IMG/VR virus record: IMGVR_UViG_3300042541_001760 | Location: 62,001-126,000 of that record | Direction: 5' to 3' (one strand) | DNA length: 64,000 nucleotides | In this document: positions 3,958 through 63,357 of the stretch, piece by piece | How the letters are laid out: every line of letters starts with the position of its first letter | Position numbering within the stretch: position 1 is the stretch's first letter | Made by a program: the position numbers and the translations under genes | Notes under the pieces: generated by a model | The model's input: the letters and a program-made list of their open reading frames with translations, nothing else | Told to the model about the DNA's origin: nothing | Databases searched by the model: none

Positions 3958-4347
3958 TTAAGACCAAGAAGCGTCTCCAATATCACCTTGATACTTTCTA
4001 AATTCTCTATCGTGGTCAAATCCAGATTCACCACCACTCTTTTGTGGTCTTCTAGTTTTGATTGTTAAAGGTTTTCCTGTTTTTTCTTTATATGTGTTAA
4101 ACATTGCCTTACCCATATCACCACCTAAAGCTCTTCTTTTTGGATGTTTTTCGTGAAATGATTCATAGTCATTAAATTCCTCTGAATCAAAATCATCATC
4201 ATTTATATCATCGTCAGAGAATTGGTCGGTATCCATATCAACCCATTTTTCATCACCACCAAATGAACCATATCTTTCACCTTCGCTGATTATTCTTTTT
4301 ACTAACCTAACTAAATCACTTTCTGTTAATCTTACAATTTTTTTCAT
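3958..4347 (-). CDS. Hypothetical protein with LTESDL-type N-terminal leader
   Basis: MKKIVRLTESDLVRLVKRIISE. Confidence 0.7.
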   Translation of the reverse strand: MKKIVRLTESDLVRLVKRIISEGERYGSFGGDEKWVDMDTDQFSDDDINDDDFDSEEFNDYESFHEKHPKRRALGGDMGKAMFNTYKEKTGKPLTIKTRRPQKSGGESGFDHDREFRKYQGDIGDASWS

Positions 4348-4393
4348 AATATAATTTTTATTATAAATATATTACGACTTGTAAAAAAAATAT

Positions 4394-4765
4394 TTAAAGC
4401 AAAGATATCTTTTTCTTTCTCTCAATCTTTTTTTCATTAGGGATAAACACGCTTAATAACCCATCCTCAATAGTTGCTTCAAGTTTAGAGGTGTCAATAT
4501 TTAATCCCAAATCATAAGAGAAGTGAACACTCTTAGTTTTATCACCACTTGATGATTTAATTACACGACTACCATCAATGGTTAAAATTGTGTCATCAAC
4601 ATCAACTTTTAAATTTGACTTATTAAAGCCAGGGACGCTGAATACATAATAAGCCCCATCTTCGGTTTTATGAACATCATAGTCACTGACATAATTTCTT
4701 CTGAATTTAGCATCAGTAAAGTCGTTTAGGATTGTGTCGAAAATTGATAAATTTCCTGTTTTCAT
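4394..4765 (-). CDS. Hsp20/alpha-crystallin small heat-shock protein
   Basis: VPGFNKSNLKV...LEATIEDGLLSVFIP and C-terminal IxI-like KKISLL. Confidence 0.85.
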   Translation of the reverse strand: MKTGNLSIFDTILNDFTDAKFRRNYVSDYDVHKTEDGAYYVFSVPGFNKSNLKVDVDDTILTIDGSRVIKSSSGDKTKSVHFSYDLGLNIDTSKLEATIEDGLLSVFIPNEKKIERKKKISLL

Positions 4766-4806
4766 AGTTTTTTAAATTTTTATGTTTATTATTTGATTGT
4801 GAATTA

Positions 4807-4868
4807 TTCAACTGGTGTGCCAAATAAAATATACGACATTTTGTCAGTTAGTATATGACAATTTGTCA
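4807..4868 (-). promoter_or_regulatory. Sigma54-like promoter for hsp20 plus two palindromic operator/enhancer sites
   Basis: Minus strand TGGCACACCAGTTGAA (4822-4807); palindromes GACATTTTGTC (4835-4845) and TGACAATTTGTCA (4856-4868). Confidence 0.55.
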
Positions 4869-4918
4869 CTATTGAACTATTGAGTATAATTTCATATATT
4901 TATTAAAAAAATAAGATT

Positions 4919-7841: not shown

Positions 7842-8288
7842 TTAATCTTTTGATTTGATTTTAAATTTTATATTTTCCACATCATTTTTACTTGAAACCC
7901 AATGAACGTCAGATGGAATTTTTTCTAAGAGATTTGAATAATTTTTTAGTAAGGTATTAAAGTGTTTTTTATTAAACCATTTAGACCTTTTAATAATTAT
8001 TTTAACTACATTTTTATCCTTATCTAATAATATTGCCGATCCGGGCGCCATTATACTAACCTCATTCTTGAAAGTATCAAAGTCAAAATGTTTTCTCATG
8101 CCGTCAAAATCGTCATCATCATCTTGCGACATTAAATTTTTACCCATGTCTTTTGTATAATCGTCACCTTGATAAAACATTGAGTCCATAGGAGATTCTA
8201 AAATAATGGTATTATAACCTCTTTTTTTATGCATTTCTAATATTCTACCTCTCTCAGATGAATTAATATTGTTGAATAAATTTTTCAT
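7842..8288 (-). CDS. Hypothetical protein with phage leader motif
   Basis: INSSERGRILEMH...IILES. Confidence 0.65.
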   Translation of the reverse strand: MKNLFNNINSSERGRILEMHKKRGYNTIILESPMDSMFYQGDDYTKDMGKNLMSQDDDDDFDGMRKHFDFDTFKNEVSIMAPGSAILLDKDKNVVKIIIKRSKWFNKKHFNTLLKNYSNLLEKIPSDVHWVSSKNDVENIKFKIKSKD

Positions 8289-8309
8289 ACTGTTTTTTGT
8301 TTATAAATA

Positions 8310-10156: not shown

Positions 10157-10159
10157 TCT

Positions 10160-10191: not shown

Positions 10192-10533
10192 TTAATAAAG
10201 ATTAGTTATCCAGTTATATCTTGACTCAATCTTAGGTAAGTATCTATCTAATAAAAAATTATATATTTCATCAGACGGAAATTCGTCTTGACCCCAATTT
10301 GATAAATCTCCGTGATACTCGTCAATAATACCATTTATTATACGTCTTTTAAAATCATCAAATTCCATCCTATTACCATCTCTAAGTTCTCTTAAAAAAA
10401 TATCAGTAACGTAATTTAAATTATCTAGTATGTCACTATCTAATGAACTAATATCAACTCTTCTACGTAGAAAAGAAGATTCATTAATCCCCATCACTTC
10501 CTGTATCCTCTGTATATTTTCTTGTAGATTCAT
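10192..10533 (-). CDS. MNLQENI-leader family protein
   Basis: MNLQENIQRIQEVMGINE; body resembles 11977-12282 (RRxDIxxLD). Confidence 0.75.
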   Translation of the reverse strand: MNLQENIQRIQEVMGINESSFLRRRVDISSLDSDILDNLNYVTDIFLRELRDGNRMEFDDFKRRIINGIIDEYHGDLSNWGQDEFPSDEIYNFLLDRYLPKIESRYNWITNLY

Positions 10534-10548
10534 AACATATAAATATTA

Positions 10549-11976: not shown

Positions 11977-12282
11977 TTAATCAATTCCCAATTTTTCCTT
12001 AACATATTTAATCATAGGTTTTTCATACATTAAATATGAATCCCAATATTGTTGTTCCGTTCCTGTATCATTAATATCGCTAAAATTTTTTGTGGCTATG
12101 AATTGTCTTACCGTATCATAAATTGCGGTGCTCAAACTTTCACCCTCCTCTATTTGGTCTTTAATATCTTTAATCAGGTCATCTAGTTCGTCAATATCAA
12201 ATCTCCTCTTGAACCACGGACTAAGATTTTCATTAAGACCCATCATTTCCTGTATCCTTTGTATGTTTTCTTGTAGATTCAT
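11977..12282 (-). CDS. MNLQENI-leader family protein
   Basis: MNLQENIQRIQEMMGLNE. Confidence 0.75.
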   Translation of the reverse strand: MNLQENIQRIQEMMGLNENLSPWFKRRFDIDELDDLIKDIKDQIEEGESLSTAIYDTVRQFIATKNFSDINDTGTEQQYWDSYLMYEKPMIKYVKEKLGID

Positions 12283-12292: not shown

Positions 12293-13147
12293 CTAAGCAA
12301 AATTATTTAATGATGAAGAATCATTATTTTTATTCATAGCAACAGTATTCATTAAATCAATAAAATTATTCATCTTTTCTTGGTTAGTTCCTTTTAAAGA
12401 TTTAAAAATGTCTTGATAATGTACGTTTTTTAATATAGTTGGATTTTTAATCATTTTATTATAATCATCTTTAGTAAATTGTTTTTTCCCCGCATCGTAT
12501 ATACCTTGTTGATTTAGTAAATACCTAATTGGTTGGATTCTATTAATAAATTCACTTGGGGTTGATTCATAATCAAAAACCTTATCACCGATTTTATAAT
12601 TGGGGTATTTTTTATCACCTCCTTGGGTATACTTATAAATTTTTTCTTTTGTTGATTGTGGTATTCTTGAACCTCCGTCATCAACCAGGTGACCAAATTC
12701 ATGAGCCGGTATAGTTTCATATCCGGTAACTGGATTCCAATTTTTTGGATTATACTCTTTTTCAAAATACACATGACCTTTCTTATCATAACCTTTTGCA
12801 TCAGGAGTCCATTTATTTTTTTTCCATTTTTTATCTAAATAATCATAATACTCACCCTCATAATTTTTAGGTATCATTAACCCTGATACATATCCCGGTT
12901 CTTTTGAGATAGCTCTTACGAAGTGTGTTTGGTCTTTAACATTATCCAAATTTTTTAATCTCTCTTTTCTTTCTTTTTCTATAAAATCTTGAGGTTTATT
13001 AGGAAATTCTTTTTTTAATCTTTCTAAGTACATTGTCGAATTTAAATATGATTTCCACCACTGTAGTTGTTTGTCGAATTCACTGGTGGTTTGCTCATTT
13101 AAGCCCATTACTTCTTTAATTCTTTGTATGTTTTCTTGTAGGTTCAT
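12293..13147 (-). CDS. MNLQENI-leader protein with zincin HExxH motif
   Basis: MNLQENIQRIKEVMGLNE; AHEFGH...PSE. Confidence 0.7.
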   Translation of the reverse strand: MNLQENIQRIKEVMGLNEQTTSEFDKQLQWWKSYLNSTMYLERLKKEFPNKPQDFIEKERKERLKNLDNVKDQTHFVRAISKEPGYVSGLMIPKNYEGEYYDYLDKKWKKNKWTPDAKGYDKKGHVYFEKEYNPKNWNPVTGYETIPAHEFGHLVDDGGSRIPQSTKEKIYKYTQGGDKKYPNYKIGDKVFDYESTPSEFINRIQPIRYLLNQQGIYDAGKKQFTKDDYNKMIKNPTILKNVHYQDIFKSLKGTNQEKMNNFIDLMNTVAMNKNNDSSSLNNFA

Positions 13148-13149
13148 AA

Positions 13150-13926
13150 CTATTTTTTAGGAGTTGGGATTTTAGTGTCTTTTATAAATTTTCCATACGC
13201 ATTTTTATATGACTTTTGCGTTTCATCATTTACGTTTTTGGTGTATTGCCAATTCCAATATAAATCTTTGTTTGGTTTGAATCCATAAAATTTATGAACT
13301 TCCTTTTGGGTTGCAGTTACATTCTCACCATTCCAATTCTGACCGACACAAATAAAACCTGTCTCAATATCTTTAATAATGTTTGATTCACCCAATGTTG
13401 TATGTCTATTTTCTAACCAATTCAATCTCTCAATTAAGTTTTGGTAATACATATTGGTCTGACCCCATCTTATAGAACTGAAAAATAAAACAACATCCGA
13501 TTCAAATAACTCTTTGGATATCTTCCATAATTCGTCTGAGGGTTCATTTATATTAACCCAACATCTATGATCACCTGACGGGTTTTTATCTTTGTCTTTA
13601 AGTTTGGCTTTTAATAATCCACAAGAGTTTCCGTCTTTTCTTGATACATTACCTTCACAGGGTAAAATTTTAAGTTCTGGTACATCTATCAATACTGACT
13701 TATCACCTAATTGGTCTTTTAAATACATCGCAATCATTTTTGATTTTGGTATATCAATATTCTTATCATCCCAATTATATCTGTTTGAGCAACTTAATAA
13801 TAAAACTTTTTTTTTCTTTTTTAGAATATCTAATGTTTTCTCAATTGATTTCCATGCGTCCGATTGAACCATTTCTTCCGAAATCATCATCTCTCTTATT
13901 CTATCTATATTTTCTTGTAGGTTCAT
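13150..13926 (-). CDS. MNLQENI-leader protein with flavodoxin-like (FMN reductase / Fe-S flavoprotein) domain
   Basis: LSCSNR, PCEGNVS..C..C, SDVVLFFSSIRWGQ...LIERL. Confidence 0.7.
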   Translation of the reverse strand: MNLQENIDRIREMMISEEMVQSDAWKSIEKTLDILKKKKKVLLLSCSNRYNWDDKNIDIPKSKMIAMYLKDQLGDKSVLIDVPELKILPCEGNVSRKDGNSCGLLKAKLKDKDKNPSGDHRCWVNINEPSDELWKISKELFESDVVLFFSSIRWGQTNMYYQNLIERLNWLENRHTTLGESNIIKDIETGFICVGQNWNGENVTATQKEVHKFYGFKPNKDLYWNWQYTKNVNDETQKSYKNAYGKFIKDTKIPTPKK

Positions 13927-14444
13927 TTCTTTGTCTTTTTTACGCAGTTAGGGTATCTTTTACCAAACATTGTCTTCATTCCTTTTTGGGTGTATCCTGC
14001 CCAACATTTCTCTGTGAGTTCCCCTTCTTTCATTTCAGACATTTCATCAATTTCCTCCGAATAATCCTCATTCTTTAAACAATGATATTCGTCACCAACA
14101 TTTTGGAATAATTTACCTTTAAATTTGTCCGCATATTTCTCATTTAGATATTCTATTAGTAAATTATTAAATTCATCCAAATTTAATAATACCGAATCTG
14201 AGTAAGCCCTAAGTTTCCTATAAGGACCGCACTCTGTTACCCATAAAACACCCCAATCATTTCTATGGAATACGTCTTTATCTTTTTTATTATACCATTT
14301 ACCATATACGTAATTCTTATCACCATATTCAACTTTTAAATCTAATTCGTTAAATACTCTATCAAAGCGACTAAACAGAAAACTTCTAATTTTTTCTTCT
14401 TTGGTTTCCCTCAATACTCTTCTTATGGTTTCTTGTAGATTCAT
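13923..14444 (-). CDS. MNLQE-leader protein with C-terminal CWxGY...PNCV motif
   Basis: Start moved to MNLQETIRRVLRE; C-terminus KCWAGYTQKGMKTMFGKRYPNCVK. Confidence 0.7.
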   Translation of the reverse strand: MNLQETIRRVLRETKEEKIRSFLFSRFDRVFNELDLKVEYGDKNYVYGKWYNKKDKDVFHRNDWGVLWVTECGPYRKLRAYSDSVLLNLDEFNNLLIEYLNEKYADKFKGKLFQNVGDEYHCLKNEDYSEEIDEMSEMKEGELTEKCWAGYTQKGMKTMFGKRYPNCVKKTKK

Positions 14445-14564: not shown

Positions 14565-16019
14565 ATGAAAATATTAGTATCGGAAAGTCAATACAAAAGA
14601 TTAGTTGAGAGTTTATTAGATGAATCCATTTTAATTATAGGTGATAGTCATAGCGTAGATGCAGGATTCACTTACTCAAGTTTATTAAAGAAAAAATTTT
14701 CGGATGTAAAAATATCAGCATCGGTTGGCCAAGGAACATCTTGGATGAAATCAGAATTAGCTAGAGAGTTAACCAAAAAACATTACGATAAAGTTATAAT
14801 TTGGGGTGGGAACAACGATATTGGTTCAACCTCCTCTATATCTGGAGCAATATCAAACATACAACAAATGGTTAATATGGTTAACTCACAAGACGGTCAA
14901 TCATATGTAATCATTGGTTTTGACCAAGAAGTTTTTACCAAAAAAGTAAAAAATAAAATGAGAGAAAGATATATAGATTTGCAAAAACAGTTATCTAGTG
15001 AGATAAGTAATGCCGTAATAATTCCTGCCTTTGATATTGATAACTCTTACACATCAGATAATGTACACGGAAATAAGAGTGCTCACGAAAAAGTTTTTAG
15101 AACCGTTACGGAGTATCTACAAAAAACAACACAAAAAGAAAAACAAAAAGATGAAAGTAAAAATTCTGAAACGTTAATGTCAAGATTAGAAGATTATTTG
15201 GATTCTGGTTTAGAATTAGTTGCAAGAAAACGAGGTTCAATGGTTTATGAAAAAGAAGTTGAGGATATACAAACCGCTCTCCAATTTTTAGGGTTTTCTT
15301 TACCTAAGTGGGGTGTAGATGGAAAATTTGGGCCAGAAACAAAAAAAGCAACTGAAAACTTCCAAGAAGAAAATGATTTGGAAGTGACAGGAATTTTTTC
15401 AATCAAAGATTTTGAAAAACTTATTGATGTTTTGGAATCAAAGGGTGTTACTGATGAAGATTTCATGAATGTTCAGAAAAACAAAACAGAAGAGTTATCA
15501 TCAGATTTTGAATCGACGGATTTTGAAACAATTGAAAATTCTGGAATTCAAGTTAGTAAATACCCAAATGATATCGAAAATAGATTACAGGATATTTTAG
15601 GTAAAGAAAAATTCAATATATTTGTTTCCAAGTGTCGAGGAATTGGGTTAGACCCTTTGATTGCAATTAGACAACTTTATACAGAATCTGTCGGTTTTAG
15701 TCCTGACGTTTTGACTTGTAAAAGAAAATCACCTGCGGGAGCCATGGGAATTGCTCAATTTATGCCGGGTACTTGGCCAAGTTATGGTAAAGGTAGTCCA
15801 TGCAATGTCGATGACGCATTGGACGCTTATATTAGGTTTATGGATTATTTACTAAAAAGATATGAAGGTCGAGTAGATCTGGCAGTTGCGTCATATAATA
15901 GTGGTCCAAACTTAAATATATATAAGAAAACATATAACTCAAATACACCTTTCGCATCACTTAAAGGTAAAATACCAGGAGAAACATATAAATACGCATC
16001 CACAATTCTACAAGCATAA
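14565..16019 (+). CDS. SGNH/GDSL esterase + PG-binding + lytic transglycosylase (SLT) protein
   Basis: IIGDSHS, GGNND, DNVH (SGNH); GVDGKFGPET; ES...GAMGIAQFMPGTW...YNSG (SLT). Confidence 0.85.
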   Translation: MKILVSESQYKRLVESLLDESILIIGDSHSVDAGFTYSSLLKKKFSDVKISASVGQGTSWMKSELARELTKKHYDKVIIWGGNNDIGSTSSISGAISNIQQMVNMVNSQDGQSYVIIGFDQEVFTKKVKNKMRERYIDLQKQLSSEISNAVIIPAFDIDNSYTSDNVHGNKSAHEKVFRTVTEYLQKTTQKEKQKDESKNSETLMSRLEDYLDSGLELVARKRGSMVYEKEVEDIQTALQFLGFSLPKWGVDGKFGPETKKATENFQEENDLEVTGIFSIKDFEKLIDVLESKGVTDEDFMNVQKNKTEELSSDFESTDFETIENSGIQVSKYPNDIENRLQDILGKEKFNIFVSKCRGIGLDPLIAIRQLYTESVGFSPDVLTCKRKSPAGAMGIAQFMPGTWPSYGKGSPCNVDDALDAYIRFMDYLLKRYEGRVDLAVASYNSGPNLNIYKKTYNSNTPFASLKGKIPGETYKYASTILQA

Positions 16020-29411: not shown

Positions 29412-30017
29412 TTACGATAAAGCCTTTGACTTCATCTCGGAAAATTTCTTCTCCATTTTTGATCCGATTTTGTCCAATAAAGGACAAATCATTGTTTTTA
29501 AATCTGATTTAAAAGACCTTTCAAAATTATTTATATAAATCTCATCTGATAGCCCCATATTACTAATAACTTGTTTTGATAAAACTTCACAGAAATGATT
29601 ACAATCTGAAAATAATTTTGCAGTTTCTTCAGGACTTACTTCGTCTGTAATTTTTTTAATTGAACTACTTAAAATTGAATCCGATTTTAATTTTAATTTC
29701 TCAATCAAGAAATCCGCTGAAGCCGTTCTAAAAGCGTTTGTTATTTGAGTTCCTCCACCATCTTTAAATAAAGTATTAAAAAGGTCTAATAGACTCTCAT
29801 TAATTAATTCATTATTGTGGTTTAAAGTTCTTAATTTAACAGATTCTTTAATCACGCTAGAATATAATTTAATCATTTCATTTTTAGTTTTAACGTTAGA
29901 CGACTCCAATATAATGTTAAATCTATTTTTGATTATATTAGACTCTTGTATTAAACTACTTTTAGTTTCTTTAACCTCTAAAAGATTTTTTCTTATTGTC
30001 TTACTTAAATTTCTCAT
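29412..30017 (-). CDS. Hypothetical protein with leader motif
   Basis: MRNLSKTIRKNLLE; multiple ILE/INE sites. Confidence 0.7.
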   Translation of the reverse strand: MRNLSKTIRKNLLEVKETKSSLIQESNIIKNRFNIILESSNVKTKNEMIKLYSSVIKESVKLRTLNHNNELINESLLDLFNTLFKDGGGTQITNAFRTASADFLIEKLKLKSDSILSSSIKKITDEVSPEETAKLFSDCNHFCEVLSKQVISNMGLSDEIYINNFERSFKSDLKTMICPLLDKIGSKMEKKFSEMKSKALS

Positions 30018-37711: not shown

Positions 37712-38890
37712 CTATCGTAGACCCCCCTCTTTATTGACACGGAATACAGGACATGACATCATAATGTTTTTAGCTTCACCCCTAATTGGTTTATGTACAG
37801 TTGTGCTTGACCCACCACCTCTTTTATTTTTTCCATTAGGAACATATTCTCCAACATTACCTTTAAATTCGGCAATATATCTTGTAGTAACATTAGTATT
37901 TGGAACTGCCGGAACTTTTTCTTCCGATGGTTGAGTAATTTCATTAAATCCAACCCTCACTCTTGGTATTGAGTATTTGTATTTATCGTAATCTTCAGGT
38001 CTTGGGTGTGGTTCACCGCATTGATTTCTTTGTTTTTCATCACTTGATGGTGGTTCCATCTTTTCTTGACCTTTAAGGATGAAAGCCGTCCCAATGGGTG
38101 GATTAGGTCCTGATGTTCCATCATCATGATCACCTTTAGGGTTCTGAATTATGTTCTCGGATCCTTTACACCATTTATTAAACCCATTGGCGTTAAGTTG
38201 TTCTAATATATATGTTTTAACGGCATTGTTCCTTTCGGTGGATAATTGTAAAAATGATTTATCTTTCGCGGATTCCGTATTTCTATATCTACTTGCGGAA
38301 CTATCAACCTGTAATAAGTCAATACAAGCATCTCTATTACCTTTTCCTTCTACAAAAGGTTGTATCATATTAATTGTTATATCTCTTTTACCTGGTTCGG
38401 TTAACTCAGACAAATTATTTACAAAATAGAAATTAGTTAGATTCTCTTTTTTAAAGGTAATTTCCATCCCAGGATTTAATTCTTCAAGAGGTTTATCTTT
38501 ATCCTCATCAGAATCTATTTTATCTCTAAAAGTTATAACCTCTATCCATGTATTCTTTCTAGTATACTCAATAGTGTTAGCGGCGAATATCTGTTCCTTT
38601 TGACAAATTATTTCCCAAGTCTCCCTAGATGAAGTGTCTTCTTTTGGTATTTTACCATCCACTAATTTTTTATTCGCTAGTGTTTCTTTATAAAACTCAC
38701 CTCCAACGTAGTTTGTATTATTTTTCGCCCTCTCATTTGTTGTGAAAAAATTAAAACCGACCGATCGATCATCTGATTTATGAGTTGTGTTATAAGCAAT
38801 CTTTGTATTTTGCTCAATAATTAACCTTTTTTCTTTATATAGGTTTAATATTTGATGTCTTTCCTGTTCTGTTACTATAAATTTTTTCAT
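37712..38890 (-). CDS. Hypothetical protein with leader motif; possible OmpA-like central domain
   Basis: MKKFIVTEQERHQIL...IIEQ; SSAS...LSTERNNAVKTYI. Confidence 0.65.
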   Translation of the reverse strand: MKKFIVTEQERHQILNLYKEKRLIIEQNTKIAYNTTHKSDDRSVGFNFFTTNERAKNNTNYVGGEFYKETLANKKLVDGKIPKEDTSSRETWEIICQKEQIFAANTIEYTRKNTWIEVITFRDKIDSDEDKDKPLEELNPGMEITFKKENLTNFYFVNNLSELTEPGKRDITINMIQPFVEGKGNRDACIDLLQVDSSASRYRNTESAKDKSFLQLSTERNNAVKTYILEQLNANGFNKWCKGSENIIQNPKGDHDDGTSGPNPPIGTAFILKGQEKMEPPSSDEKQRNQCGEPHPRPEDYDKYKYSIPRVRVGFNEITQPSEEKVPAVPNTNVTTRYIAEFKGNVGEYVPNGKNKRGGGSSTTVHKPIRGEAKNIMMSCPVFRVNKEGGLR

Positions 38891-39211: not shown

Positions 39212-39748
39212 TTAATTGTATTTATTAACCCTTCTGAACCAATCTAATGACTCATTTACGTTATCTTTAATGTCCCCAACGGAATCTTCATCCTCAACAT
39301 CATCAAGGAATTTAACATCAATCTCAAATTTTGGATCTTCGTCACCTTCATCTTCAAATGACTCATCATCTTCATATAAATCATAAGAACCGCCACACCA
39401 TTCACACTGTTCGTCGGTAAATTCATCATATCCAAGACCATTACAATGAGTGCATAAATCTTCACCATCTTCGTCACCCATTGTTCCGTATTCTAAATCA
39501 TCCTCACCATCACCAATCATATCTAATGGTAGATCCATACTTTCGTTGATGCCCATATTTGTGTATTTCTTGACCTCACCCCTATTATTAACGGTAATAC
39601 CATTTTTATCGTTGGCTAAATCCTGAACATACAAAGGTTGTTCCTTATTAGTTCCGTAATTGGTAACATAACCATCATAAAGGTGTTTATGTTTGTCAAG
39701 GATGTTGTTTCTTTCTTCCTCTGTAATGTTAAAAAAGTATGCTGCCAT
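39212..39748 (-). CDS. Acidic protein with leader motif and CxxC pairs
   Basis: ITEEERNNILDKH; CTHCNGLG..CEWCGG. Confidence 0.7.
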   Translation of the reverse strand: MAAYFFNITEEERNNILDKHKHLYDGYVTNYGTNKEQPLYVQDLANDKNGITVNNRGEVKKYTNMGINESMDLPLDMIGDGEDDLEYGTMGDEDGEDLCTHCNGLGYDEFTDEQCEWCGGSYDLYEDDESFEDEGDEDPKFEIDVKFLDDVEDEDSVGDIKDNVNESLDWFRRVNKYN

Positions 39749-40685: not shown

Positions 40686-41315
40686 ATGAATTTTAACATT
40701 TTAATTAGCGAAAGTCAAAGAAAAAAGCTTATTATTGAAAGTGTTGGTGATAATTTAGGTAAAGACACCAAAAAATTATTTGACCTAACCAAGAACGTAA
40801 TAAATCAATCTTCAGAACAACTGGGGATGAATTTACAATTTATGTTAACTTGGGGAGCGTCAATTGGGGGTCTAATGGGGCCTTTAAGTGATTACATTGA
40901 GGGTAGGTCCCCTTCCATTACTGATATGGATAAAAGTTTGATTTTAGTTGGTGTCATATCTGTTTTATATTATGACAACAAAGAAGCAATTGAAAAAATT
41001 CTAAGAAAGATTAAAGAAAATGGGTTATCTGATGATTTTTTGGATACTCTAAGAAAAGGTAAGGAAATTAAAAAGACGTTCTTGGATTTCTTATCGTCAT
41101 TGAATATATCGGCTCATAAGATGACAAACATTATGAGTTATACTTTCATAATACCACTATTACCGATGTTATATACCATTTCACAATCGGGAGATGTATC
41201 ACCTGAAGATATTGAAAGTATTGTAAGGAGAATTGCCGGATTCGGTATGTTAACCATTTCAGGTATTACCTTGAAGGAGTTAATCAGTAAGGTTATTCGG
41301 AGGTTTAGTGATTAA
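40686..41315 (+). CDS. Hypothetical membrane-associated protein with leader motif
   Basis: ILISESQRKKLIIES. Confidence 0.7.
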   Translation: MNFNILISESQRKKLIIESVGDNLGKDTKKLFDLTKNVINQSSEQLGMNLQFMLTWGASIGGLMGPLSDYIEGRSPSITDMDKSLILVGVISVLYYDNKEAIEKILRKIKENGLSDDFLDTLRKGKEIKKTFLDFLSSLNISAHKMTNIMSYTFIIPLLPMLYTISQSGDVSPEDIESIVRRIAGFGMLTISGITLKELISKVIRRFSD

Positions 41316-41718: not shown

Positions 41719-42060
41719 CTATATATTAATTTGATTTAGTTTTGCTCTATGCCCTAAATTTAACATTTCAAAAAATTCATCAACTTTATTGGTTATTCCA
41801 CGCTCAAATAAGTAAGTTTTGTCATATAATTTGTTAAATATTGGTGCTAACATGCCGCTATACGACAAAACATCAATATCAAATACAATATAATCAGTCC
41901 AAGTACCAACTAATATCATTTCTTTAGTTCCAACAATTCTTAGTTTAAATTTTATTTCAATCTCAATCTCATCAAAATTGACAACAGGTCCGGCATAAGT
42001 AAGAACTTTCTTATCTAACCTATCATTTATTTTTTGTATGAATTCCTCAGATATCTTCAT
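41719..42060 (-). CDS. Hypothetical protein
   Basis: 113 aa ORF. Confidence 0.6.
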   Translation of the reverse strand: MKISEEFIQKINDRLDKKVLTYAGPVVNFDEIEIEIKFKLRIVGTKEMILVGTWTDYIVFDIDVLSYSGMLAPIFNKLYDKTYLFERGITNKVDEFFEMLNLGHRAKLNQINI

Positions 42061-42485
42061 CCCTTATTAATTTTTTTTGTGGAGATTATCTCAACACCCT
42101 TACCTTTATTTTTAAGAGTTATCTCTTTTTCATTTGGATATAAGATATTATTTTCAAGGGTTTCCATAACATCCACCATTGATTTTTTTGCCTTTACCGT
42201 AACCAAATAATATTCCTCTCCACTTCCTGTAACATAATCGTGGGACGATAATAGGTTTTTCCTGTCGGTAGAGTAGTGGGATCCTAATTCCTCTTTATTG
42301 ATATCGTCTTTTGAGTCAACGGATAATATGCGATATAGTTTTAGTTCTTCGGGTAACTCTTTAACATAACTAACAATATCCCCCAATTCAGATTTAGCAT
42401 CCTCACCGGTAATGTCCATTGTTTTAAGCAACGACATTAAACGCTTCTTATTTATTGTTTCATTTAGTAACCCTAATAACTTCAT
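42057..42485 (-). CDS. Possible ADP-ribosyltransferase-fold protein
   Basis: LYR...HYST...NEKEI (R-S-E pattern). Confidence 0.5.
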   Translation of the reverse strand: MKLLGLLNETINKKRLMSLLKTMDITGEDAKSELGDIVSYVKELPEELKLYRILSVDSKDDINKEELGSHYSTDRKNLLSSHDYVTGSGEEYYLVTVKAKKSMVDVMETLENNILYPNEKEITLKNKGKGVEIISTKKINKG

Positions 42486-42925: not shown

Positions 42926-43441
42926 TTATTTTCCTTTGATTAGCATTAAACAACGCTTCAAATATTCCTTCGTTCTTGGTGATGGAGTGTAATCATCATT
43001 CTTAGTTTGTAATGATAATACTTTCTCAATGTCTTTTACTAGTTCATCCCCGTGTTCATTCTCTTTATACAACTCAATAATCTTCTCCATCGCTTGATTA
43101 CACTCACCTGAAGTTTCATCAAAATAATTTCTTGTTTTGAATTTGTTCAAATGGTGAAGTAGGTCGTAAGATAAATGTTCACCCTTATCTTTGATGTCAT
43201 TATTCAATCTAATAGTTTTAAGAAGGTCTAGTGTATCAACAATACCATTTATACCACCAGATCTCTTGGTAATTGATGGTGCGTATGTCTTGAAACTATC
43301 AGAGTCACCAACAATCTCATCCAAAGACGCAGTATTTGTTGTTAAACATCTTTGTTTTTTCTCCTCAACTTGTTCTTCTTCGGAGATTACTCTCTTAACT
43401 ATTTTTTTAATATCGCTTTCAGTTAATTTTATAACTTTCAT
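42926..43441 (-). CDS. Hypothetical protein with LTESD leader
   Basis: MKVIKLTESDIKKIVKRVISEE. Confidence 0.7.
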   Translation of the reverse strand: MKVIKLTESDIKKIVKRVISEEEQVEEKKQRCLTTNTASLDEIVGDSDSFKTYAPSITKRSGGINGIVDTLDLLKTIRLNNDIKDKGEHLSYDLLHHLNKFKTRNYFDETSGECNQAMEKIIELYKENEHGDELVKDIEKVLSLQTKNDDYTPSPRTKEYLKRCLMLIKGK

Positions 43442-45161: not shown

Positions 45162-45533
45162 ATGAATTTAGATAATCTAATACGAAGAATTCTTAAGGAA
45201 GAATTTGAAAGTGATTACTTACCGAACTTAACCGGTGTTGTAATTGAAGAGGATGAGTATGGTTCTGTGGAGTTAATTATGATTAATGAAGCCAAATACC
45301 ATAATAAGACGGTAACCTTAAATAAACCTTTCTACACCCCTGGCGGACCTAAAAAGCGTTCAGTTTATGTTAAAAACGCAAAGGGTAATGTGGTTAAAGT
45401 TAATTTTGGGGATCCGAATATGAGAATAAAAAAATCAAGTCCGTCACATCGTAAATCATTCAGGGCTAGACATAATTGTCAAAATCCCGGACCAAAGACT
45501 TCTGCCAAATACTGGAGCTGCAGGGCTTGGTAA
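45162..45533 (+). CDS. Phage protein with leader and basic C-terminal domain
   Basis: MNLDNLIRRILKEE; VKVNFGDPNMRIK...RKSFRARHNC..YWSC..W. Confidence 0.7.
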   Translation: MNLDNLIRRILKEEFESDYLPNLTGVVIEEDEYGSVELIMINEAKYHNKTVTLNKPFYTPGGPKKRSVYVKNAKGNVVKVNFGDPNMRIKKSSPSHRKSFRARHNCQNPGPKTSAKYWSCRAW

Positions 45534-56569: not shown

Positions 56570-56760
56570 TGCCACAGATAGATAACACAAATTTAGAAGA
56601 GTATTGGTTTGAAGGAGAACCTTTTAAAGGTGTTAATTCAACATTAGATACCGGTAGTCAGGAATATTGGTTTGAGGGTGAACCTATTAAAACTTTATTA
56701 ACTCCACAAACAAATCAAAATCAACAAGGAAGTTTCTTTGCTTTTTTTGATGGTTTTTAA
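56569..56760 (+). CDS. Small protein with duplicated EYWFEGEP motif
   Basis: TAATG-coupled start MPQID. Confidence 0.6.
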   Translation: MPQIDNTNLEEYWFEGEPFKGVNSTLDTGSQEYWFEGEPIKTLLTPQTNQNQQGSFFAFFDGF

Positions 56761-58174: not shown

Positions 58175-58177
58175 AGG

Positions 58178-58828: not shown

Positions 58829-58852
58829 ACTACAAATATAGTGTTTTTTTTG

Positions 58853-59518
58853 TTAATCCCACCAATGATCCATCTTTCGTTCAAGTATTTTAAACAAAAG
58901 TTTCTTAGCCTTAATGTGATTATGTAATCCAACTCTGTGAGGTATAATAGATTTATCTGACTCCTTATCTTTGAACTTGTTTTTAACAATTCTTGTTGAG
59001 TTTTTGTAGATATTTAAGTAATCCTCAAAATTTTCTGATATTATATCAGATTTAACTTCATACAACTTACCACCTTTTTCATCCTTACGATCAACCTCAA
59101 CAAAATCAAATGTTGATTCGTAATAATCAAAATACTCGGTATTATAATATTCATTTTTGACTTTATCAATCAAATTCAAAACTATTGTCATATCGCGATT
59201 ATTAATATCAACTCCTGAATGTCTATTATTTGACACAAGATACTCTCTTTGGAGATATATTTTTCTTTCGAGTACGGTGTATATGTATGAGTGATCCCAA
59301 TTCCTGTCTTTCCAAATGGTTGGAATCCAATAATACAAATTAGCGAATCCAACTCCGACATCATTAAGGAAGTTTAGTATTTTCATCAAGAAACTACCGA
59401 TACTTGTATTACGATACTTATCGTATATAAACCAATTAAGTAATGTTATTGGGTTGTAGGTCTTTCTACCGAATGCTGAATCTTTTGGTAAGATTAAAGG
59501 TTTATATTTATTTTCCAT
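58853..59518 (-). CDS. Hypothetical phage protein
   Basis: IWKDRNWDH...HWWD; start moved to MENKY. Confidence 0.7.
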   Translation of the reverse strand: MENKYKPLILPKDSAFGRKTYNPITLLNWFIYDKYRNTSIGSFLMKILNFLNDVGVGFANLYYWIPTIWKDRNWDHSYIYTVLERKIYLQREYLVSNNRHSGVDINNRDMTIVLNLIDKVKNEYYNTEYFDYYESTFDFVEVDRKDEKGGKLYEVKSDIISENFEDYLNIYKNSTRIVKNKFKDKESDKSIIPHRVGLHNHIKAKKLLFKILERKMDHWWD

Positions 59519-60711: not shown

Positions 60712-61011
60712 TTATTTGGTTGATATAATCATATCAATATATTTCTTAATCGTTCTTCTGATAATATCTTCAGATAAATTAGGAAAAGATTCAGAGACGT
60801 AAAGATACATCTTATTTACCAAATATTTCTTATTACCCTCAACAAAATAACGCTTATCATCAACATTAATGAATGTATGATCCTTATCAAGGATTGTTTG
60901 GGTATGAATGGGATAGTGTCTCCTTAAATGAGTCAGGACACCATTATCAGTGTTATCCTTATACTTATTCAGGATATCATCTTTTTCGTCTTGTTCAATT
61001 ACTAACTTCAT
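60712..61011 (-). CDS. Hypothetical protein with leader motif
   Basis: MKLVIEQDEKDDILNKY. Confidence 0.6.
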   Translation of the reverse strand: MKLVIEQDEKDDILNKYKDNTDNGVLTHLRRHYPIHTQTILDKDHTFINVDDKRYFVEGNKKYLVNKMYLYVSESFPNLSEDIIRRTIKKYIDMIISTK

Positions 61012-61027
61012 ATTAGTAAATATACGA

Positions 61028-61918
61028 TTAAAAGTATTTCACCGCACTACCATCCTCAAAAATAAGTATTTTCATACCATCATAATCCATATCAACTTCA
61101 TTACCAACAACATTTAATATCTTGATAGGTCTTTTCAGTTTTATGTTAGTGAAAATTGGGTCATACACTTTATTATTACCATTAAAGTCATACTGAATTA
61201 ATCTATAATAAGAAACACCATCATAAGGAGTTCTATCTAAATATTCATAATCAACTCTGTAGTTTGAATTACCTTTAGATGTAACTTTTGCTACTTGTCT
61301 ATATGTCACCAAATCTTTTGATGTTTCCACAGAAAAATAACTTGAGTTTGACTCGCTCATTGTTGTCCATTTCAACATAACACCCCCTTCTGTTGGTGTT
61401 GCGGTAAATAGAGTTAGATTAACAGGTAATAAAGAAGCGTTTGACCAGTAAGGACAAATTGTTGATAGTCCTTGACAGAAGAAACCAATAGCATTTCCGG
61501 TAACACACCAAACATAACGATTTCCGGTGGTAAGATTATTAAAAAACTGACCTTGACCAACAACAACATCTGATGTCATATCACAAAGAGTTAGTTGTGT
61601 AAAATTTACGGTCGTACAACCAAGAGCGGTAAAACCTGAATTCAAATACACTCCACCTCCTTGAGCAATAAACTCAAAACAAAATGTGAAAGCGATTTGA
61701 GGTTGGTCAAGATAATAACAATACCCATTAGATTCCAAATAACCATACGAGGGGATGGGAGTACTCGATTGGTTCACAGGTCCAATAACTGAATCACACA
61801 TAGATGTGAATCTACCATTAGTTAATGTATCTAACTGAATACTATACAATTGTGATTGTTGAGCACTCAAAGATAAACCAAAACTAAGGAATATTAATAT
61901 GGAAAGTAGAGTTTTCAT
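61028..61918 (-). CDS. Exported Bacteroidota-type protein with LPV Ig-like domain and possible T9SS C-terminal signal
   Basis: Signal peptide MKTLLSIL; LPVNLTLF..W.T.SE.N...F.VE.S.D...YYRL.Q.D. Confidence 0.7.
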   Translation of the reverse strand: MKTLLSILIFLSFGLSLSAQQSQLYSIQLDTLTNGRFTSMCDSVIGPVNQSSTPIPSYGYLESNGYCYYLDQPQIAFTFCFEFIAQGGGVYLNSGFTALGCTTVNFTQLTLCDMTSDVVVGQGQFFNNLTTGNRYVWCVTGNAIGFFCQGLSTICPYWSNASLLPVNLTLFTATPTEGGVMLKWTTMSESNSSYFSVETSKDLVTYRQVAKVTSKGNSNYRVDYEYLDRTPYDGVSYYRLIQYDFNGNNKVYDPIFTNIKLKRPIKILNVVGNEVDMDYDGMKILIFEDGSAVKYF

Positions 61919-62005
61919 ATCTATAAATATCTGGATATTTGTGTTTAGGTGTGCTAATATATAATTAAATTTTGAATAGTAAATACTTTTTATTACATTT
62001 GTCAT

Positions 62006-62473
62006 ATGAATATTTTCGTTTTAGATTGGGATATTAAACAGTGCGCAAAAGACCATTGTGATAAACATTGCGTTAAAATGATTCTTGAGACCGCTCAATT
62101 ATTGTGTGGTGTTCATTGGTTGTTGGGTAATGACGCTCCATATAAATTGAGTCATAGGAATCACCCGTGTTCTATATGGACAAGAAAATCATTAAGTAAC
62201 TATCTTTGGTTATGTGAATTAGGTTTAGAGTTATGTAACGAGTATACTCGTAGGTATGGTAAAACTCATAAGACTAAACAAATACTTGAATGGTGTTTAG
62301 ATAATAAACCTCAAATCCCTGATATAGGTTTTACAGAACCATCATTAGCAATGCCTGACGATTATAAAACTAATGATGTTGTTGAATCTTATAGGAGATA
62401 CTACGTTAATGATAAGAAAGAAATTGCTAAGTGGAAAGATGGATATGTTCCAAGTTGGTTTAAATTATCCTAA
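62006..62473 (+). CDS. Pyrimidine-dimer DNA glycosylase (DenV-like family)
   Basis: MNIFVLD...HCDKHCVKMILETAQLL, HPC..W, EYT.RYGK.H, AMPD. Confidence 0.8.
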   Translation: MNIFVLDWDIKQCAKDHCDKHCVKMILETAQLLCGVHWLLGNDAPYKLSHRNHPCSIWTRKSLSNYLWLCELGLELCNEYTRRYGKTHKTKQILEWCLDNKPQIPDIGFTEPSLAMPDDYKTNDVVESYRRYYVNDKKEIAKWKDGYVPSWFKLS

Positions 62474-63357
62474 GCAGTACAACCACCATCTCTACAGAAT
62501 AAATTCTTTTCTTTTTCTCTTCTTGTTTTTAATCCTGAAAATCCGGCTTTATCTGAGTTGAATGTGAGTATCCTTTTTGATGCCTCAGCAAATTTACCCG
62601 CTCTAACATAATCAATTAAATCGTTTTGGGCTGAATCTCCTCGTATTGATCCACATCCAGCATTAAACGTTAAAGAAGTTAAAGCATCAAACATGCTTTG
62701 AGTTATCGTTCTATTAATGTTATTTCTTTTCCACTCACCGAATATTCTTTTAACGCAATCGGATGCGGTTTTAGTATCCTTTTGTAATAATTGCTCCGCC
62801 TTTGATTGGTTTATTGTCATATTAGGTTTTACATTTTCACCTGTATGACCAAATCCTACGGTCCATTTATCACCTGGTACTCTATAAGATTTTAACATAG
62901 GTTGACAATTAGAACCCGGTTTACCTTCTTCACATTTCAAAAACTTAATAAGTTCTTCGGAAGGTTGTAATGATAAAGGGTCTAGTAATGTTTTTTGTTG
63001 TGATGATGTCTTTTTTTGTGATGGTAATGTATTTTGTTTTTTACCATTTAAAATTAGATTTAAAAGTCCGTTGGTTTTAAAAATATTGTAAATTGTTTTT
63101 TTCTCCTCATCGGTAAACTCATAAGGTTCTAATATTATTTGTTGTAGATTTTGACTATGATTCTTAACTAATATATTATTAACAGAATTTAAAATATTCT
63201 GATTATTTATTAGTTTTAATGCGGAATACATTTTTTCTTCATCCGTACCAACACCACTAACAGACGACCATATAGTGTCGGCAATTTCTTGGGGGTTCGG
63301 GGATTTTAATTGCTCAATTAAAATTTTACACTGACTTTCATTAATTATTAACTTCAT
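62470..63357 (-). CDS. Leader + annexin-like repeat + GH24 lysozyme
   Basis: MKLIINESQ; SVSGVGTDEE; EEG...WTVGFGHT...FDALTSLTFNAG...GL.TRR..E. Confidence 0.8.
   Translation of the reverse strand: MKLIINESQCKILIEQLKSPNPQEIADTIWSSVSGVGTDEEKMYSALKLINNQNILNSVNNILVKNHSQNLQQIILEPYEFTDEEKKTIYNIFKTNGLLNLILNGKKQNTLPSQKKTSSQQKTLLDPLSLQPSEELIKFLKCEEGKPGSNCQPMLKSYRVPGDKWTVGFGHTGENVKPNMTINQSKAEQLLQKDTKTASDCVKRIFGEWKRNNINRTITQSMFDALTSLTFNAGCGSIRGDSAQNDLIDYVRAGKFAEASKRILTFNSDKAGFSGLKTRREKEKNLFCRDGGCTA

What the first reader, a model, noticed from the sequence alone, without database searches (positions are those of the whole stretch)
3958..63357. About 20 unrelated proteins share N-terminal leaders and a TATTTAT upstream motif: a candidate virion-cargo targeting system
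Seen: leaders of the types MKxIxLTESxL..LVKRIISE (starts 4347, 14565, 38890, 40686, 43441, 63357), MNLQENIxRIxExMxxNE (10533, 12282, 13147, 13926, 14444, 34038, 45162) and short LLLE/LLNE (30017, 31814, 42485). They are fused to diverse bodies: lysozyme, SGNH-SLT, flavodoxin, zincin and ART-like. These genes, or the first gene of their runs, have TATTTAT(A/T) about 5-25 nt before the ATG instead of TAnnTTTG. Established: T4 internal proteins carry an N-terminal capsid-targeting sequence removed by the prohead protease after Glu. Inference: these are late-expressed proteins packaged via a modular leader, cleaved at (L/I)xE and ejected into the host, and TATTTAT is the phage late promoter.
Basis: partly seen in the sequence, partly recalled or inferred. 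Interest (0 to 1): 0.65.

Follow-up and report, generated by a model that had tools for sequence, protein, structure and literature searches.

The report
Shared leader peptides on phage proteins
An uncultured 261-kb T4-like lake phage puts a few highly conserved N-terminal leader peptides, each ending in the T4 prohead-protease cleavage motif (Leu/Ile-x-Glu), on dozens of unrelated proteins, which most likely marks them as cargo loaded into the capsid, though no experiment shows this yet.

Summary
The window lies in a 261-kb IMG/VR phage from lake water, with a T4-type head module: portal, Peptidase_S77 protease and gp23 capsid protein. About 30 of its proteins, 19 of them in the window, share charged N-terminal leaders while their bodies are unrelated. 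N-terminal-only similarity involves 39 proteins; C-terminal-only similarity involves 8.

Leader A (MKKIVRLTESDLVRLVKRVIxE) occurs 8-11 times per genome in four clade genomes. I collected 125 leader-A proteins with 90 unrelated body types. It is nearly absent from bacterial genomes.

Every well-sampled leader family (A, B1, B2) ends in (L/I)-x-Glu, with a variable middle residue and never Asp at the last position. Conservation stops directly after the Glu. The capsid protein has I-N-E at the position of T4 gp23's maturation cut.

TATTTAT is a true oriented upstream element. It heads every leader-gene unit in the window and also the portal, protease and baseplate genes. That it acts late is inferred only.

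Best reading: an expanded, multi-family version of the T4 capsid-targeting sequence system (confidence 0.55). Packaging and cleavage are untested.

The parts
3958..4347 (-). Leader-A protein, 129 aa. Leader is residues 1-22 (window 4282-4347), ending I-S-E22.
   Evidence: TATTTAT at 4363-4369. Orthologs with 50-90% identical bodies keep the leader almost unchanged.
42926..43441 (-). Leader-A protein, 171 aa. Leader is residues 1-21 (43379-43441), ending I-S-E21.
   Evidence: TATTTAT at 43458-43464.
10192..10533 (-). Leader-B1 protein, 113 aa. Leader is residues 1-18 (10480-10533), ending I-N-E18.
   Evidence: TATTTAT at 10539-10545, 5 nt from the ATG.
11977..12282 (-). Leader-B1 protein, 101 aa. 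Leader 12229-12282, ending L-N-E18.
   Evidence: Lies inside the unit headed by TATTTAT at 14450-14456. Metagenome contigs pile up on this leader and break at it.
12293..13147 (-). Leader-B1 protein, 284 aa, with an HEFGH motif at residue 149. Leader 13094-13147, ending L-N-E18.
   Evidence: Weak MMP-9 matches (E about 0.4). PHROG 'tail protein' match at 2e-7.
13150..13926 (-). Leader-B1 protein, 258 aa, with a flavodoxin-like FMN-reductase body. Leader 13876-13926, ending I-S-E17.
   Evidence: Glu17 is invariant in 55 orthologs. Some orthologs carry a different leader, MIKLTD..ML(A/Q)EE. In the AF2 model the leader is a low-confidence helix (residues 3-19) apart from the fold.
13923..14444 (-). 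Leader-B2 protein, 173 aa. Leader 14406-14444, ending L-R-E13. First gene of the five-leader-gene B run (two non-leader genes interleaved).
   Evidence: TATTTAT at 14450-14456.
45162..45533 (+). Leader-B2 protein, 123 aa. Leader 45162-45200, ending L-K-E13.
   Evidence: TATTTAT at 45139-45145.
31849..34038 (-). 729-aa protein with a B1-like motif set back from the N-terminus (ELNRIREIMG), followed by L-M-E29.
   Evidence: No family found. Lies downstream of the gene headed by TATTTAT at 35480-35486.
34007..35455 (-). 482-aa protein with a B1-like N-terminus (NFNRIKFLIG ... I-S-E29) and a C-terminal PG_binding_1 domain. Weak candidate.
   Evidence: TATTTAT at 35480-35486.
14565..16019 (+). 'ISESQ'-type leader (residues 1-20, 14565-14624, L-V-E15 and L-D-E20) on an SGNH + PG_binding_1 + SLT body, 484 aa.
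   Evidence: TATTTAT at 14541-14547.
40686..41315 (+). 'ISESQ'-type leader (residues 1-18, I-S-E9 and I-I-E18) on a 209-aa protein.
   Evidence: TATTTAT at 40674-40680, 5 nt from the ATG.
62470..63357 (-). 'INESQ'-type leader (residues 1-15, I-N-E7 and L-I-E15) on a Phage_lysozyme body, 295 aa.
   Evidence: TATTTAT at 63362-63368, 4 nt from the ATG.
37712..38890 (-). 'TEQERxxIL' leader (residues 1-26, ending I-I-E26) on a 392-aa protein of unknown fold.
   Evidence: No TATTTAT of its own; lies downstream of the unit headed at 39766-39772.
7842..8288 (-). 'ERxRILEMHK' leader on a 148-aa protein, with I-L-E31 after it.
   Evidence: TATTTAT at 8303-8309.
39212..39748 (-). 'EEERNNILDKHK' leader on a 178-aa acidic protein.
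   Evidence: TATTTAT at 39766-39772.
29412..30017 (-). Short leader candidate (L-L-E14) on a 201-aa protein. Weak.
   Evidence: TATTTAT at 30026-30032. No paralogous leader detected by BLAST.
30039..31814 (-). Short T4-like leader candidate MRNKLLLE8 on a 591-aa protein. Weak.
   Evidence: TATTTAT at 31826-31832. No family found.
42057..42485 (-). Short leader candidate MKLLGLLNE9 on a 142-aa protein. Weak.
   Evidence: TATTTAT at 42490-42496, 4 nt from the ATG.

Best explanation
The leaders are capsid-targeting propeptides of the T4 internal-protein kind, expanded into several families.

Inferred mechanism:
1. The phage sigma factor drives TATTTAT promoters.
2. These promoters express the morphogenesis genes together with about 30 leader-bearing genes.
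3. The N-terminal leader, 8-30 residues long and helical in the one AF2 model made, binds a component of the assembling prohead core.
4. The protein is thereby enclosed when the gp23-type shell forms.
5. The gp21-type prohead protease then cuts after the Glu of the terminal (L/I)-x-E, and probably at the internal (L/I)-x-E sites too. This frees the mature protein inside the head.
6. The mature protein stays in the head or leaves with the DNA at infection.

Shown:
- the leaders, their N-terminal position and their modularity;
- the conserved (L/I)xE boundary;
- the T4-type protease, portal and capsid protein;
- the upstream motif.

Inferred: binding to the core, cleavage, presence in virions, ejection, and timing of expression.
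For: (1) T4-type head machinery.
- Peptidase_S77 scores 83 bits. It is 33% identical to T4 gp21 over 147 aligned residues, and the matching stretches include ELNHP and SSRG, which I take from memory (not tested here) to be the catalytic His and Ser motifs.
- Gp23-type capsid protein, portal and large terminase.
- The gene order matches T4 genes 20-67-68-21-22-23.

(2) Leader A boundary, in 116 metagenomic proteins.
- P3 is I/V/L in 113.
- P2 is variable (2.7 bits).
- P1 is Glu in 114 and never Asp.
- Entropy then rises to 3.4-4 bits.

(3) Other leader families.
- B1 ends in (L/I)xE in 44 of 45, even where its length changes.
- B2 does so in 36 of 37.
- Chance for such a window is 5-9%.

(4) Capsid protein. 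In six clade capsid proteins, L-(I/L)-N-E|(A/S) aligns with T4 gp23 L-T-E65|A, the known maturation cut (PMC9026906).

(5) Modularity.
- 125 leader-A proteins fall into 90 body clusters, with a median length of 135 aa.
- Flavodoxin orthologs with bodies at least 75% identical carry either the B1 leader or a different one. The boundary Glu is invariant.

(6) Peptide-level selection.
- 34% of same-residue codon pairs differ.
- These include AGY/TCN serine switches.

(7) Distribution.
- All 50 leader-A contigs checked are fragments or genomes of about 250-320 kb phages.
- 21 of the 50 carry S77, and all 3 complete genomes do.
- There are 8-11 copies per genome, all starting at ORF N-termini.
- Only 2 hits occur in 185,579 species' genomes, both on phage-like contigs.

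(8) Expression signal.
- Leader genes share the TATTTAT element with the portal, protease, scaffold-MCP operon and gp25-like baseplate gene.
- None of them has the host-type TTG-N17-21-TAnnTTTG promoter.

(9) Precedent.
- T4 ipII and ipIII share MKTYQEFIAE.
- T-even internal proteins are diverse bodies with only a conserved targeting sequence (PMC3012670).
- Multiple cleavage motifs within propeptides are known in SPN3US (PMC5694885).
Against: - No virion proteome, N-terminal sequence or transcript data exist. No RNA run holds this phage.
- (L/I)xE arises easily in amphipathic helices rich in Leu/Ile and Glu. 40% of all proteins here have one between residues 5 and 30.
- The bodies are not basic like the T4 internal proteins. 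Median pI is 5.4-5.7, the same as the whole proteome.
- Some bodies are odd cargo for a contractile-tail phage: an FMN-reductase-like enzyme and two peptidoglycan hydrolases.
- The protein in the scaffold position is not enriched in (L/I)xE.
- About 30 cargo species would be far more than T4 carries.
- TATTTAT also heads the helicase-NrdB-NrdA operon and a unit with the RecA-like gene.
- A leader-A-like N-terminus sits on a gut-metagenome contig whose incomplete bin shows no S77.
- The leaders have no sequence similarity to the T4 targeting sequence.
Confidence: 0.55

Rival explanations
1. The leaders are general docking, oligomerisation or membrane-binding amphipathic helices. They bring diverse phage proteins to a common intracellular partner or site that is not the capsid. 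They are not cleaved.
For: - Leader A is a basic amphipathic segment.
- The AF2 model shows the B1 leader as a separate helix.
- The bodies include enzymes, an FMN reductase and cell-wall hydrolases, that are not typical injected proteins.
- Body pI is ordinary.
- (L/I)xE is frequent in such helices.
Against: - It does not explain why conservation stops exactly after a Glu that is never Asp, with a free P2 residue, in three independent leader families.
- It does not explain why that Glu stays invariant when the leader is swapped.
- It does not explain why the leader is always at the extreme N-terminus.
Confidence: 0.25
2. The leaders are recognition tags for the phage's own Clp machinery, a ClpA/ClpB-like unfoldase plus ClpP. 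They would give timed degradation or unfolding of these proteins.
For: - The phage encodes a double-AAA+ Clp ATPase at window 4919-6961, next to a leader-A gene.
- It also encodes a ClpP.
- ClpA and the prohead protease are both listed as core genes of a similar aquatic jumbo-phage lineage (PMC12619734).
- Clp unfoldases are known to read N-terminal motifs (established knowledge).
Against: - There is no specific link between the leaders and Clp.
- Known degrons are short and poorly conserved, whereas these leaders are 13-22 residues and more conserved than the capsid protein.
- The Glu-specific boundary is unexplained.
- Tagging about 30 proteins, including a strongly conserved, very widespread enzyme (3,344 homologs), for destruction seems wasteful.
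Confidence: 0.08
3. The shared 5' ends exist mainly at the DNA or RNA level. A promoter + 5'UTR + first-codons cassette would spread by recombination, or be kept for translation initiation, with no role for the peptide.
For: - Four leader-A genes share almost the same TATTTAT-to-ATG stretch.
- T4 ipII and ipIII share 30 identical nucleotides.
- Metagenome contigs break and rejoin at the leader-coding segments.
Against: - 34% of conserved residues use different codons, including serine codon-family switches.
- Several leader genes lie inside operons without the cassette.
- The peptide is kept at 85-95% identity across genomes whose capsid proteins are 66-79% identical.
Confidence: 0.04

Closest known systems
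T4 capsid-targeting sequence (CTS) of internal proteins IPI, IPII, IPIII and Alt, removed by the gp21 prohead protease
   Same: - Short N-terminal leader shared by otherwise unrelated, mostly small proteins.
- It ends in (L/I)-x-Glu.
- The phage has a gp21-type protease and a T4-type head module.
- The leader genes vary between related phages.
   Different: - No sequence similarity to MKTYQEFIAE.
- The leaders are longer (13-22 residues against 7-10) and carry internal (L/I)xE sites.
- There are at least five leader families instead of one.
- About 30 carriers per genome instead of about 4.
- The bodies are not basic.
- The host is probably Bacteroidota.
- Nothing here is experimentally shown.
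Long cleaved propeptides of head and ejection proteins in phiKZ, 201phi2-1 and SPN3US
   Same: - Jumbo phages with a gp21-related protease that cuts after Glu.
- Many head proteins are processed.
- Paralogs share identical N-termini and have several cleavage motifs per propeptide (PMC5694885).
   Different: - Those propeptides are mostly over 100 residues and the motif is (S/A)-x-E.
- The carriers are paralog families rather than unrelated bodies.
- The phage lineage is different.
Encapsulin cargo-loading peptides
   Same: A short terminal peptide directs diverse enzymes into an HK97-fold shell.
   Different: - Usually C-terminal and not cleaved.
- They bind the shell protein directly.
- It is a cellular nanocompartment, not a virion.
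- This comparison is made from established knowledge only and was not tested here.

Membership tests
T4-type capsid-targeting propeptide system | The phage encodes a gp21-type (Peptidase_S77) prohead protease. | tested here: met
   PF03420 scores 83 bits at genome 53352-54083. It is 33% identical to T4 gp21 over 147 aligned residues, and the matching stretches include ELNHP and SSRG.
T4-type capsid-targeting propeptide system | A T4-type head module with a capsid protein that has a cleavable propeptide. | tested here: met
   Gp23 family at 210 bits. Portal and TerL found. I-N-E aligns with the T4 gp23 L-T-E65 cut site in six clade capsid proteins. The genes in the gp67/68/22 positions are assigned by position only.
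T4-type capsid-targeting propeptide system | The leader sits at the extreme N-terminus of otherwise unrelated proteins. | tested here: met
   Nearly all strong profile matches begin at model position 1-3 at ORF starts. 125 proteins fall into 90 body clusters. N-terminal-only similarity involves 39 proteins against 8 for C-terminal-only.
T4-type capsid-targeting propeptide system | The leader ends in the protease motif (L/I)-x-Glu. | tested here: met
   Family A: 113 of 116 have I/V/L at P3 and 114 of 116 have Glu at P1. B1: 44 of 45. B2: 36 of 37. Asp never occurs at P1 of A or B2.
T4-type capsid-targeting propeptide system | Sequence similarity to the T4 CTS (MKTYQEFIAE). | tested here: not met
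   The T4 CTS was confirmed in ipII and ipIII. By inspection of the leaders printed, none resembles it; no alignment was run. So this is an analogue, or a very distant relative, not the same peptide family.
T4-type capsid-targeting propeptide system | The proteins are found in proheads or virions and are cleaved after the Glu. | not testable with these tools
   No cultured member was found: leader A is absent from 50,697 phage records and from Flavobacterium phage immuto. No RNA or proteome data.
T4-type capsid-targeting propeptide system | The leader binds a prohead core component. | tested here: inconclusive
   Complex prediction of the scaffold-position protein with leader residues 1-40 gave no answer (score 0.00). 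This is not evidence either way.
Phage late promoter (T4 TATAAATA type) | A single -10-like element without a -35 element, placed before morphogenesis genes and absent before early genes. | tested here: inconclusive
   TATTTAT is enriched and oriented. It has no clear -35 element. It precedes the portal, protease, scaffold-MCP unit and gp25-like gene. It also precedes the helicase-RNR and RecA-like units. The phage factor is a full sigma-70 type with regions 2 and 4; T4 gp55, from memory, has no region 4. Timing is untested.

The most novel reading that the evidence does not exclude
A whole clade of freshwater jumbo T4-like phages, probably infecting Bacteroidota, uses a combinatorial set of at least five interchangeable N-terminal targeting propeptides. 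These would load about 30 different proteins per genome, and at least 90 body families across the clade, into the capsid for delivery with the DNA. That would be the largest injected-protein repertoire known for a T4-type phage. The leader would then serve as a sequence handle for finding injected anti-defence and takeover proteins in uncultured phages.
Probability: 0.4. Interest if true: 0.75.

Novelty: new variant of a known kind. Interest (0 to 1): 0.6.

Why it matters
If the leaders are capsid-targeting propeptides, they give a purely sequence-based way to list the proteins that an uncultured phage carries into its host. Such proteins act before any phage gene is expressed. In T4 and P1 this class includes anti-restriction and host-takeover proteins.

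The scale would change the view of how much protein cargo a T4-type head can carry and how fast that cargo turns over. It covers several leader families, dozens of carriers per genome and at least 90 unrelated body types across hundreds of viral contigs.

It also gives ready-made targeting tags and a predicted protease site to test in a Bacteroidota phage system. The TATTTAT element, together with the host-type promoter in front of the phage sigma-factor operon, gives a testable two-step transcription scheme for this lineage.

Tried and rejected
- **Complex prediction.** The scaffold-position protein with leader residues 1-40 gave no answer (score 0.00; controls not run). This is not evidence either way.
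- **Leader A in known phages.** tblastn of leader A against 50,697 phage records found no match at E <= 1. The window's tail-fibre region also had no megablast match.
- **Body annotation.** Pfam and PHROGs left 14 of the 20 leader-bearing proteins scanned (18 of them in the window) without any match, and three more with only weak matches of unknown or doubtful meaning. The ESM Atlas gave nothing usable for the 729-aa protein. PDB sequence searches of the 284-, 392- and 591-aa proteins gave only non-significant matches.
- **Scaffold cleavage sites.** I looked for enrichment of (L/I)xE in the scaffold-position protein, as a sign of protease specificity, and found none.
- **Cargo charge.** I looked for basic cargo like the T4 internal proteins; body pI equals that of the proteome.
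- **Expression data.** I looked for RNA runs to map transcript starts; none holds this phage.
- **DNA-level cassette.** Considered as the sole explanation and rejected, because of the codon-level variation.
- **Strict 'late only' reading of TATTTAT.** Considered and not adopted, because the element also heads the helicase-RNR and RecA-like units.

Full report
**What the window is.**
- The window is bases 62001-126000 of a 261,052-bp IMG/VR virus record with 32% G+C, estimated 89% complete.
- Near-identical DNA occurs in many lake-water metagenomes, and no RNA run holds it.
- Just left of the window lies a head module:
  - portal at 55394-57256 and large terminase at 57320-59092;
  - Peptidase_S77 prohead protease at 53352-54083, 83 bits;
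  - gp23-type major capsid protein at 49603-51441.
- The unassigned genes between them sit where T4 has genes 67, 68 and 22.
- The protease is 33% identical to T4 gp21 over 147 aligned residues. The matching stretches include ELNHP and SSRG, which I take from memory (not tested here) to be the catalytic His and Ser motifs.
- The closest cultured relative by capsid protein is Flavobacterium phage vB_FspM_immuto, at 40% identity.
- An 858-aa SprB/PKD protein with a type IX secretion C-terminal domain, at window 26742-29318, points to a Bacteroidota host.
- The gene content resembles the 'moraphages' described in PMC12619734: sigma factor, ClpA-like ATPase, prohead core protease and a gp25 homologue (gp6 was not scanned here). 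That paper does not mention N-terminal leaders. I could not test membership in that lineage.

**The leaders are real.**
- All sixteen listed starts have the stated N-termini.
- An all-against-all comparison of the first 40 residues of 375 ORFs recovers these families, while the bodies show no BLASTP similarity:
  - A: MKK(I/V)(I/V)(R/K)LTESDLxR(L/I)VKRVIxE, 9 copies in the genome;
  - B: MNLQENIQRIxExMG(L/I)NE and MNLQE(S/T)IRR(I/V)L(R/K)E, 6 copies plus 2 internal forms;
  - an I(I/L)(S/N)ESQ family;
  - an E(E/R)xxIL family;
  - several smaller ones.
- As a control, similarity confined to the N-terminal 30 residues gives 63 pairs among 39 proteins. Similarity confined to the C-terminal 30 residues gives 4 pairs among 8 proteins.
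- Six of the 39 are ordinary hydrophobic signal peptides. That shows the test picks up targeting signals.

**The leaders are widespread, modular and restricted to phages.**
- From 80 loci I read 116 distinct leader-A proteins, often 2-5 per 6-kb locus.
- Together with the 9 in this genome they fall into 90 body clusters, with a median length of 135 aa.
- Fifty leader-A contigs were checked. All are fragments or genomes of roughly 250-320-kb phages. Twenty-one hold Peptidase_S77, including all three complete genomes.
- A leader-A profile finds 9, 8, 11 and 11 copies in four clade genomes, and none in phage immuto. Nearly all strong matches begin at the start of an ORF.
- Leader B varies from 0 to 9 copies and was found in 40 loci.
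- The 'ISESQ' family and other families recur in these loci and in the 321-kb relative.
- In one genome of each of 185,579 prokaryote species, leader A was confirmed only twice. Both hits are on phage-like contigs binned into MAGs.
- The clade's capsid proteins are 66-79% identical. By eye, the leader A peptide is better conserved than that (entropy profile); I did not compute a pairwise figure.

**The boundary.**
- In the 116 leader-A proteins, the residue three before the end is I, V or L in 113. The next residue is free (2.7 bits). The last is Glu in 114, with one Gln, one Gly and no Asp.
- Entropy is 2.6 bits at the first residue after the Glu and 3.4-4 bits from the second on.
- B1 leaders end in (L/I)xE in 44 of 45, even though the length before the Glu varies: GINE, GVISE, GLLTE, MISE.
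- B2 leaders end in L(R/K)E in 36 of 37.
- The chance of such a site in windows of those sizes is 5-9%.
- Leaders also hold internal (L/I)xE sites: A at residues 9 and 22; B1 at residues 5, 12 and 18. Multiple sites within propeptides are known for SPN3US and T4 (PMC5694885).
- T4 gp21 cuts after L/I-x-E. In the T4 targeting sequence, Asp at the last position blocks processing but not targeting (PMC9026906).
- When six clade capsid proteins are aligned with T4 gp23, L-(I/L)-N-E|(A/S) falls on T4's L-T-E65|A maturation site.

**Leader swapping on one body.**
- The 258-aa protein at window 13150-13926 has 3,344 homologs, which one source names 'multimeric flavodoxin WrbA'.
- Among 120 orthologs, 75-92% identical to it by BLASTP or in alignment A4, most carry the B1 leader. 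A group carries a different short leader, MIKLTD(I/L)..(I/M)ML(A/Q)EE.
- In a 55-sequence alignment, Glu17 is the only invariant leader residue.
- In the AlphaFold2 model (pTM 0.77) the leader is a low-confidence helix at residues 3-19. The confident fold starts near residue 23.
- That fold matches FMN-dependent reductases and azoreductases.

**Peptide or DNA?**
- Among the nine leader-A copies in this genome, 34% of codon pairs that encode the same residue use different codons. These include AGT/AGC against TCT/TCC for serine, and AGA/AGG against CGT for arginine. Selection therefore acts on the peptide.
- Four copies also share nearly the same stretch from TATTTAT to the ATG, so a promoter-leader cassette also spreads as DNA.
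- In four lake metagenomes, contigs pile up several-fold on leader-coding bins compared with neighbouring bins: 12101-12300, 14301-14500 and 10501-10700. They then diverge into unlike sequence, or join other leaders, at the leader boundaries.

**TATTTAT.**
- It lies in sense orientation within 40 nt upstream of 91 of about 330 genes. Its 20 letter permutations score 3-39, and the antisense form scores 28. It is the top upstream 7-mer.
- Of its 273 copies, 118 lie in the 8.5% of the genome that is non-coding.
- There is no clear -35 element. The flanks favour (A/G)TATTTAT(A/T).
- The distance to the ATG is bimodal, at 4-6 nt and 14-17 nt. The first class would give leaderless mRNAs if the element acts like a -10 box; this is an inference.
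- It is also the top upstream 7-mer in the 321-kb relative, before 98 of 354 genes.
- It precedes the portal, the protease, the unit of the scaffold-position gene and the capsid protein, and a gp25-like baseplate gene.
- Every one of the 19 leader genes in the window lies in a unit headed by it.
- Genome-wide, 21 of 39 genes in the N-terminal-similarity set have it directly upstream, against 65 of 260 others (odds ratio 3.5, p = 5e-4).
- It also heads the helicase-NrdB-NrdA unit and a unit with the RecA-like gene.
- The host-type TTG-N17-21-TAnnTTTG promoter precedes 17 genes. None is leader-bearing, and one heads the operon of the phage's sigma-70-family factor.
- The simplest scheme has host sigma first, then the phage sigma reading TATTTAT. 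This is inferred, and 'late' is not shown.

**Interpretation.**
- The closest known system is the T4 capsid-targeting sequence. T4 ipII and ipIII share MKTYQEFIAE.
- T-even internal proteins are described as diverse proteins with only that sequence in common (PMC3012670). The sequence targets foreign proteins into the head and is removed by gp21 (PMC9026906).
- The system here has the same logic and the same protease family and motif. It differs in having no sequence similarity, longer leaders, several leader families and about ten times more carriers.
- I therefore file it as a new variant of a known kind and give the mechanism a confidence of 0.55.

**Points against.**
- There are no direct data.
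- (L/I)xE is common in amphipathic helices.
- Body charge is ordinary.
- An FMN-reductase-like enzyme and two cell-wall hydrolases are atypical cargo.
- The scaffold-position protein shows no motif enrichment.
- The promoter is not exclusive to these genes.

**Rivals.**
- A non-capsid docking or membrane-binding helix: 0.25.
- A tag for the phage's own ClpA-like/ClpP pair: 0.08.
- A purely nucleic-acid-level cassette: 0.04, largely excluded.

- No alternative genetic code was used.

Noticed in passing
window 16473-16874 (-), next to tRNA-Met at 16390-16465: A full-length GOLLD RNA (RF02032, 306 bits) lies beside a tRNA in this lake phage.
   Followed up: no
window 9764-10157 (+): A phage-borne tmRNA (RF00023, 83 bits, full model length). 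ARAGORN did not call it.
   Followed up: no
window 16390-25350 (-): Seven tRNA genes (Met x2, Tyr, Cys, Thr, Arg, Glu), all on the minus strand, in a region poor in long ORFs.
   Followed up: no
window 4919-6961 (+); genome 252721-253398 (-): The phage encodes a ClpA/ClpB-like double AAA+ ATPase without an obvious N-domain, and a ClpP protease, in addition to the S77 prohead protease. This could be a second proteolytic system acting on host or phage proteins.
   Followed up: partly
window 26742-29318 (+): An 858-aa protein with SprB repeats, PKD domains and a CHU_C type IX secretion signal. It is a host-like gliding or adhesin-type surface protein carried by the phage.
   Followed up: no
genome 156415-158486, 176930-177624, 188339-189403, 192750-193061 and 256765-258146 (outside the window): Sixteen full-length paralogs of a 100-120-aa protein that begins M(D/N)IQVNKxQLERVVIKWLNKHYGNL. 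Many have TATTTAT 5 nt before the ATG.
   Followed up: no
genome 209666-210986 (-) (outside the window): A phage sigma-70-family factor with regions 1.2, 2 and 4. It lies in an operon preceded by a host-type TTG-N-TAAGTTTG promoter. It is a candidate reader of TATTTAT.
   Followed up: partly
genome-wide, e.g. window 10539-10545, 40674-40680, 42490-42496, 63362-63368: The distance from TATTTAT to the ATG is bimodal, at 4-6 nt and 14-17 nt. The short class suggests leaderless mRNAs.
   Followed up: partly
L169:1-5420 (97.9-kb contig binned in a faecal Bacilli MAG): An AT-rich, phage-like contig with a 13-copy tandem array of about 100-aa paralogs. It also has a protein starting MSKKIVRLTESDLHRIIKESVEQILSE, which is a leader-A-like N-terminus from a gut sample. 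No S77 was found in the bin.
   Followed up: partly
window 13150-13926 (-): The flavodoxin/FMN-reductase-like protein is very widespread: 3,344 homologs, the best 120 of them 76-92% identical. It looks like a very widespread gene of this phage group, with unknown role.
   Followed up: partly
window 12279-14460: In four lake metagenomes, assembled contigs join, skip or turn back exactly at the leader-coding segments (12282, 13147, 13926, 14444). The repeated leaders therefore fragment assemblies of these phages.
   Followed up: partly
window 19485-20546 (-): A T4 Rnl1-type RNA ligase (PF09511) lies close to the tRNA cluster.
   Followed up: no
genome 300-3149 (outside the window): Low-complexity 'VGVxVGV' ORFs at the left end of the record. 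This is probably repetitive DNA rather than genes.
   Followed up: no
window 45162-45533 (+) and 13923-14444 (-): The bodies of the two B2-leader proteins end in Cys-rich basic motifs (…SFRARHNCQNPGPKTSAKYWSCRAW; …CWAGYTQKGMKTMFGKRYPNCVKK). The second matches several PHROGs of unknown function.
   Followed up: no
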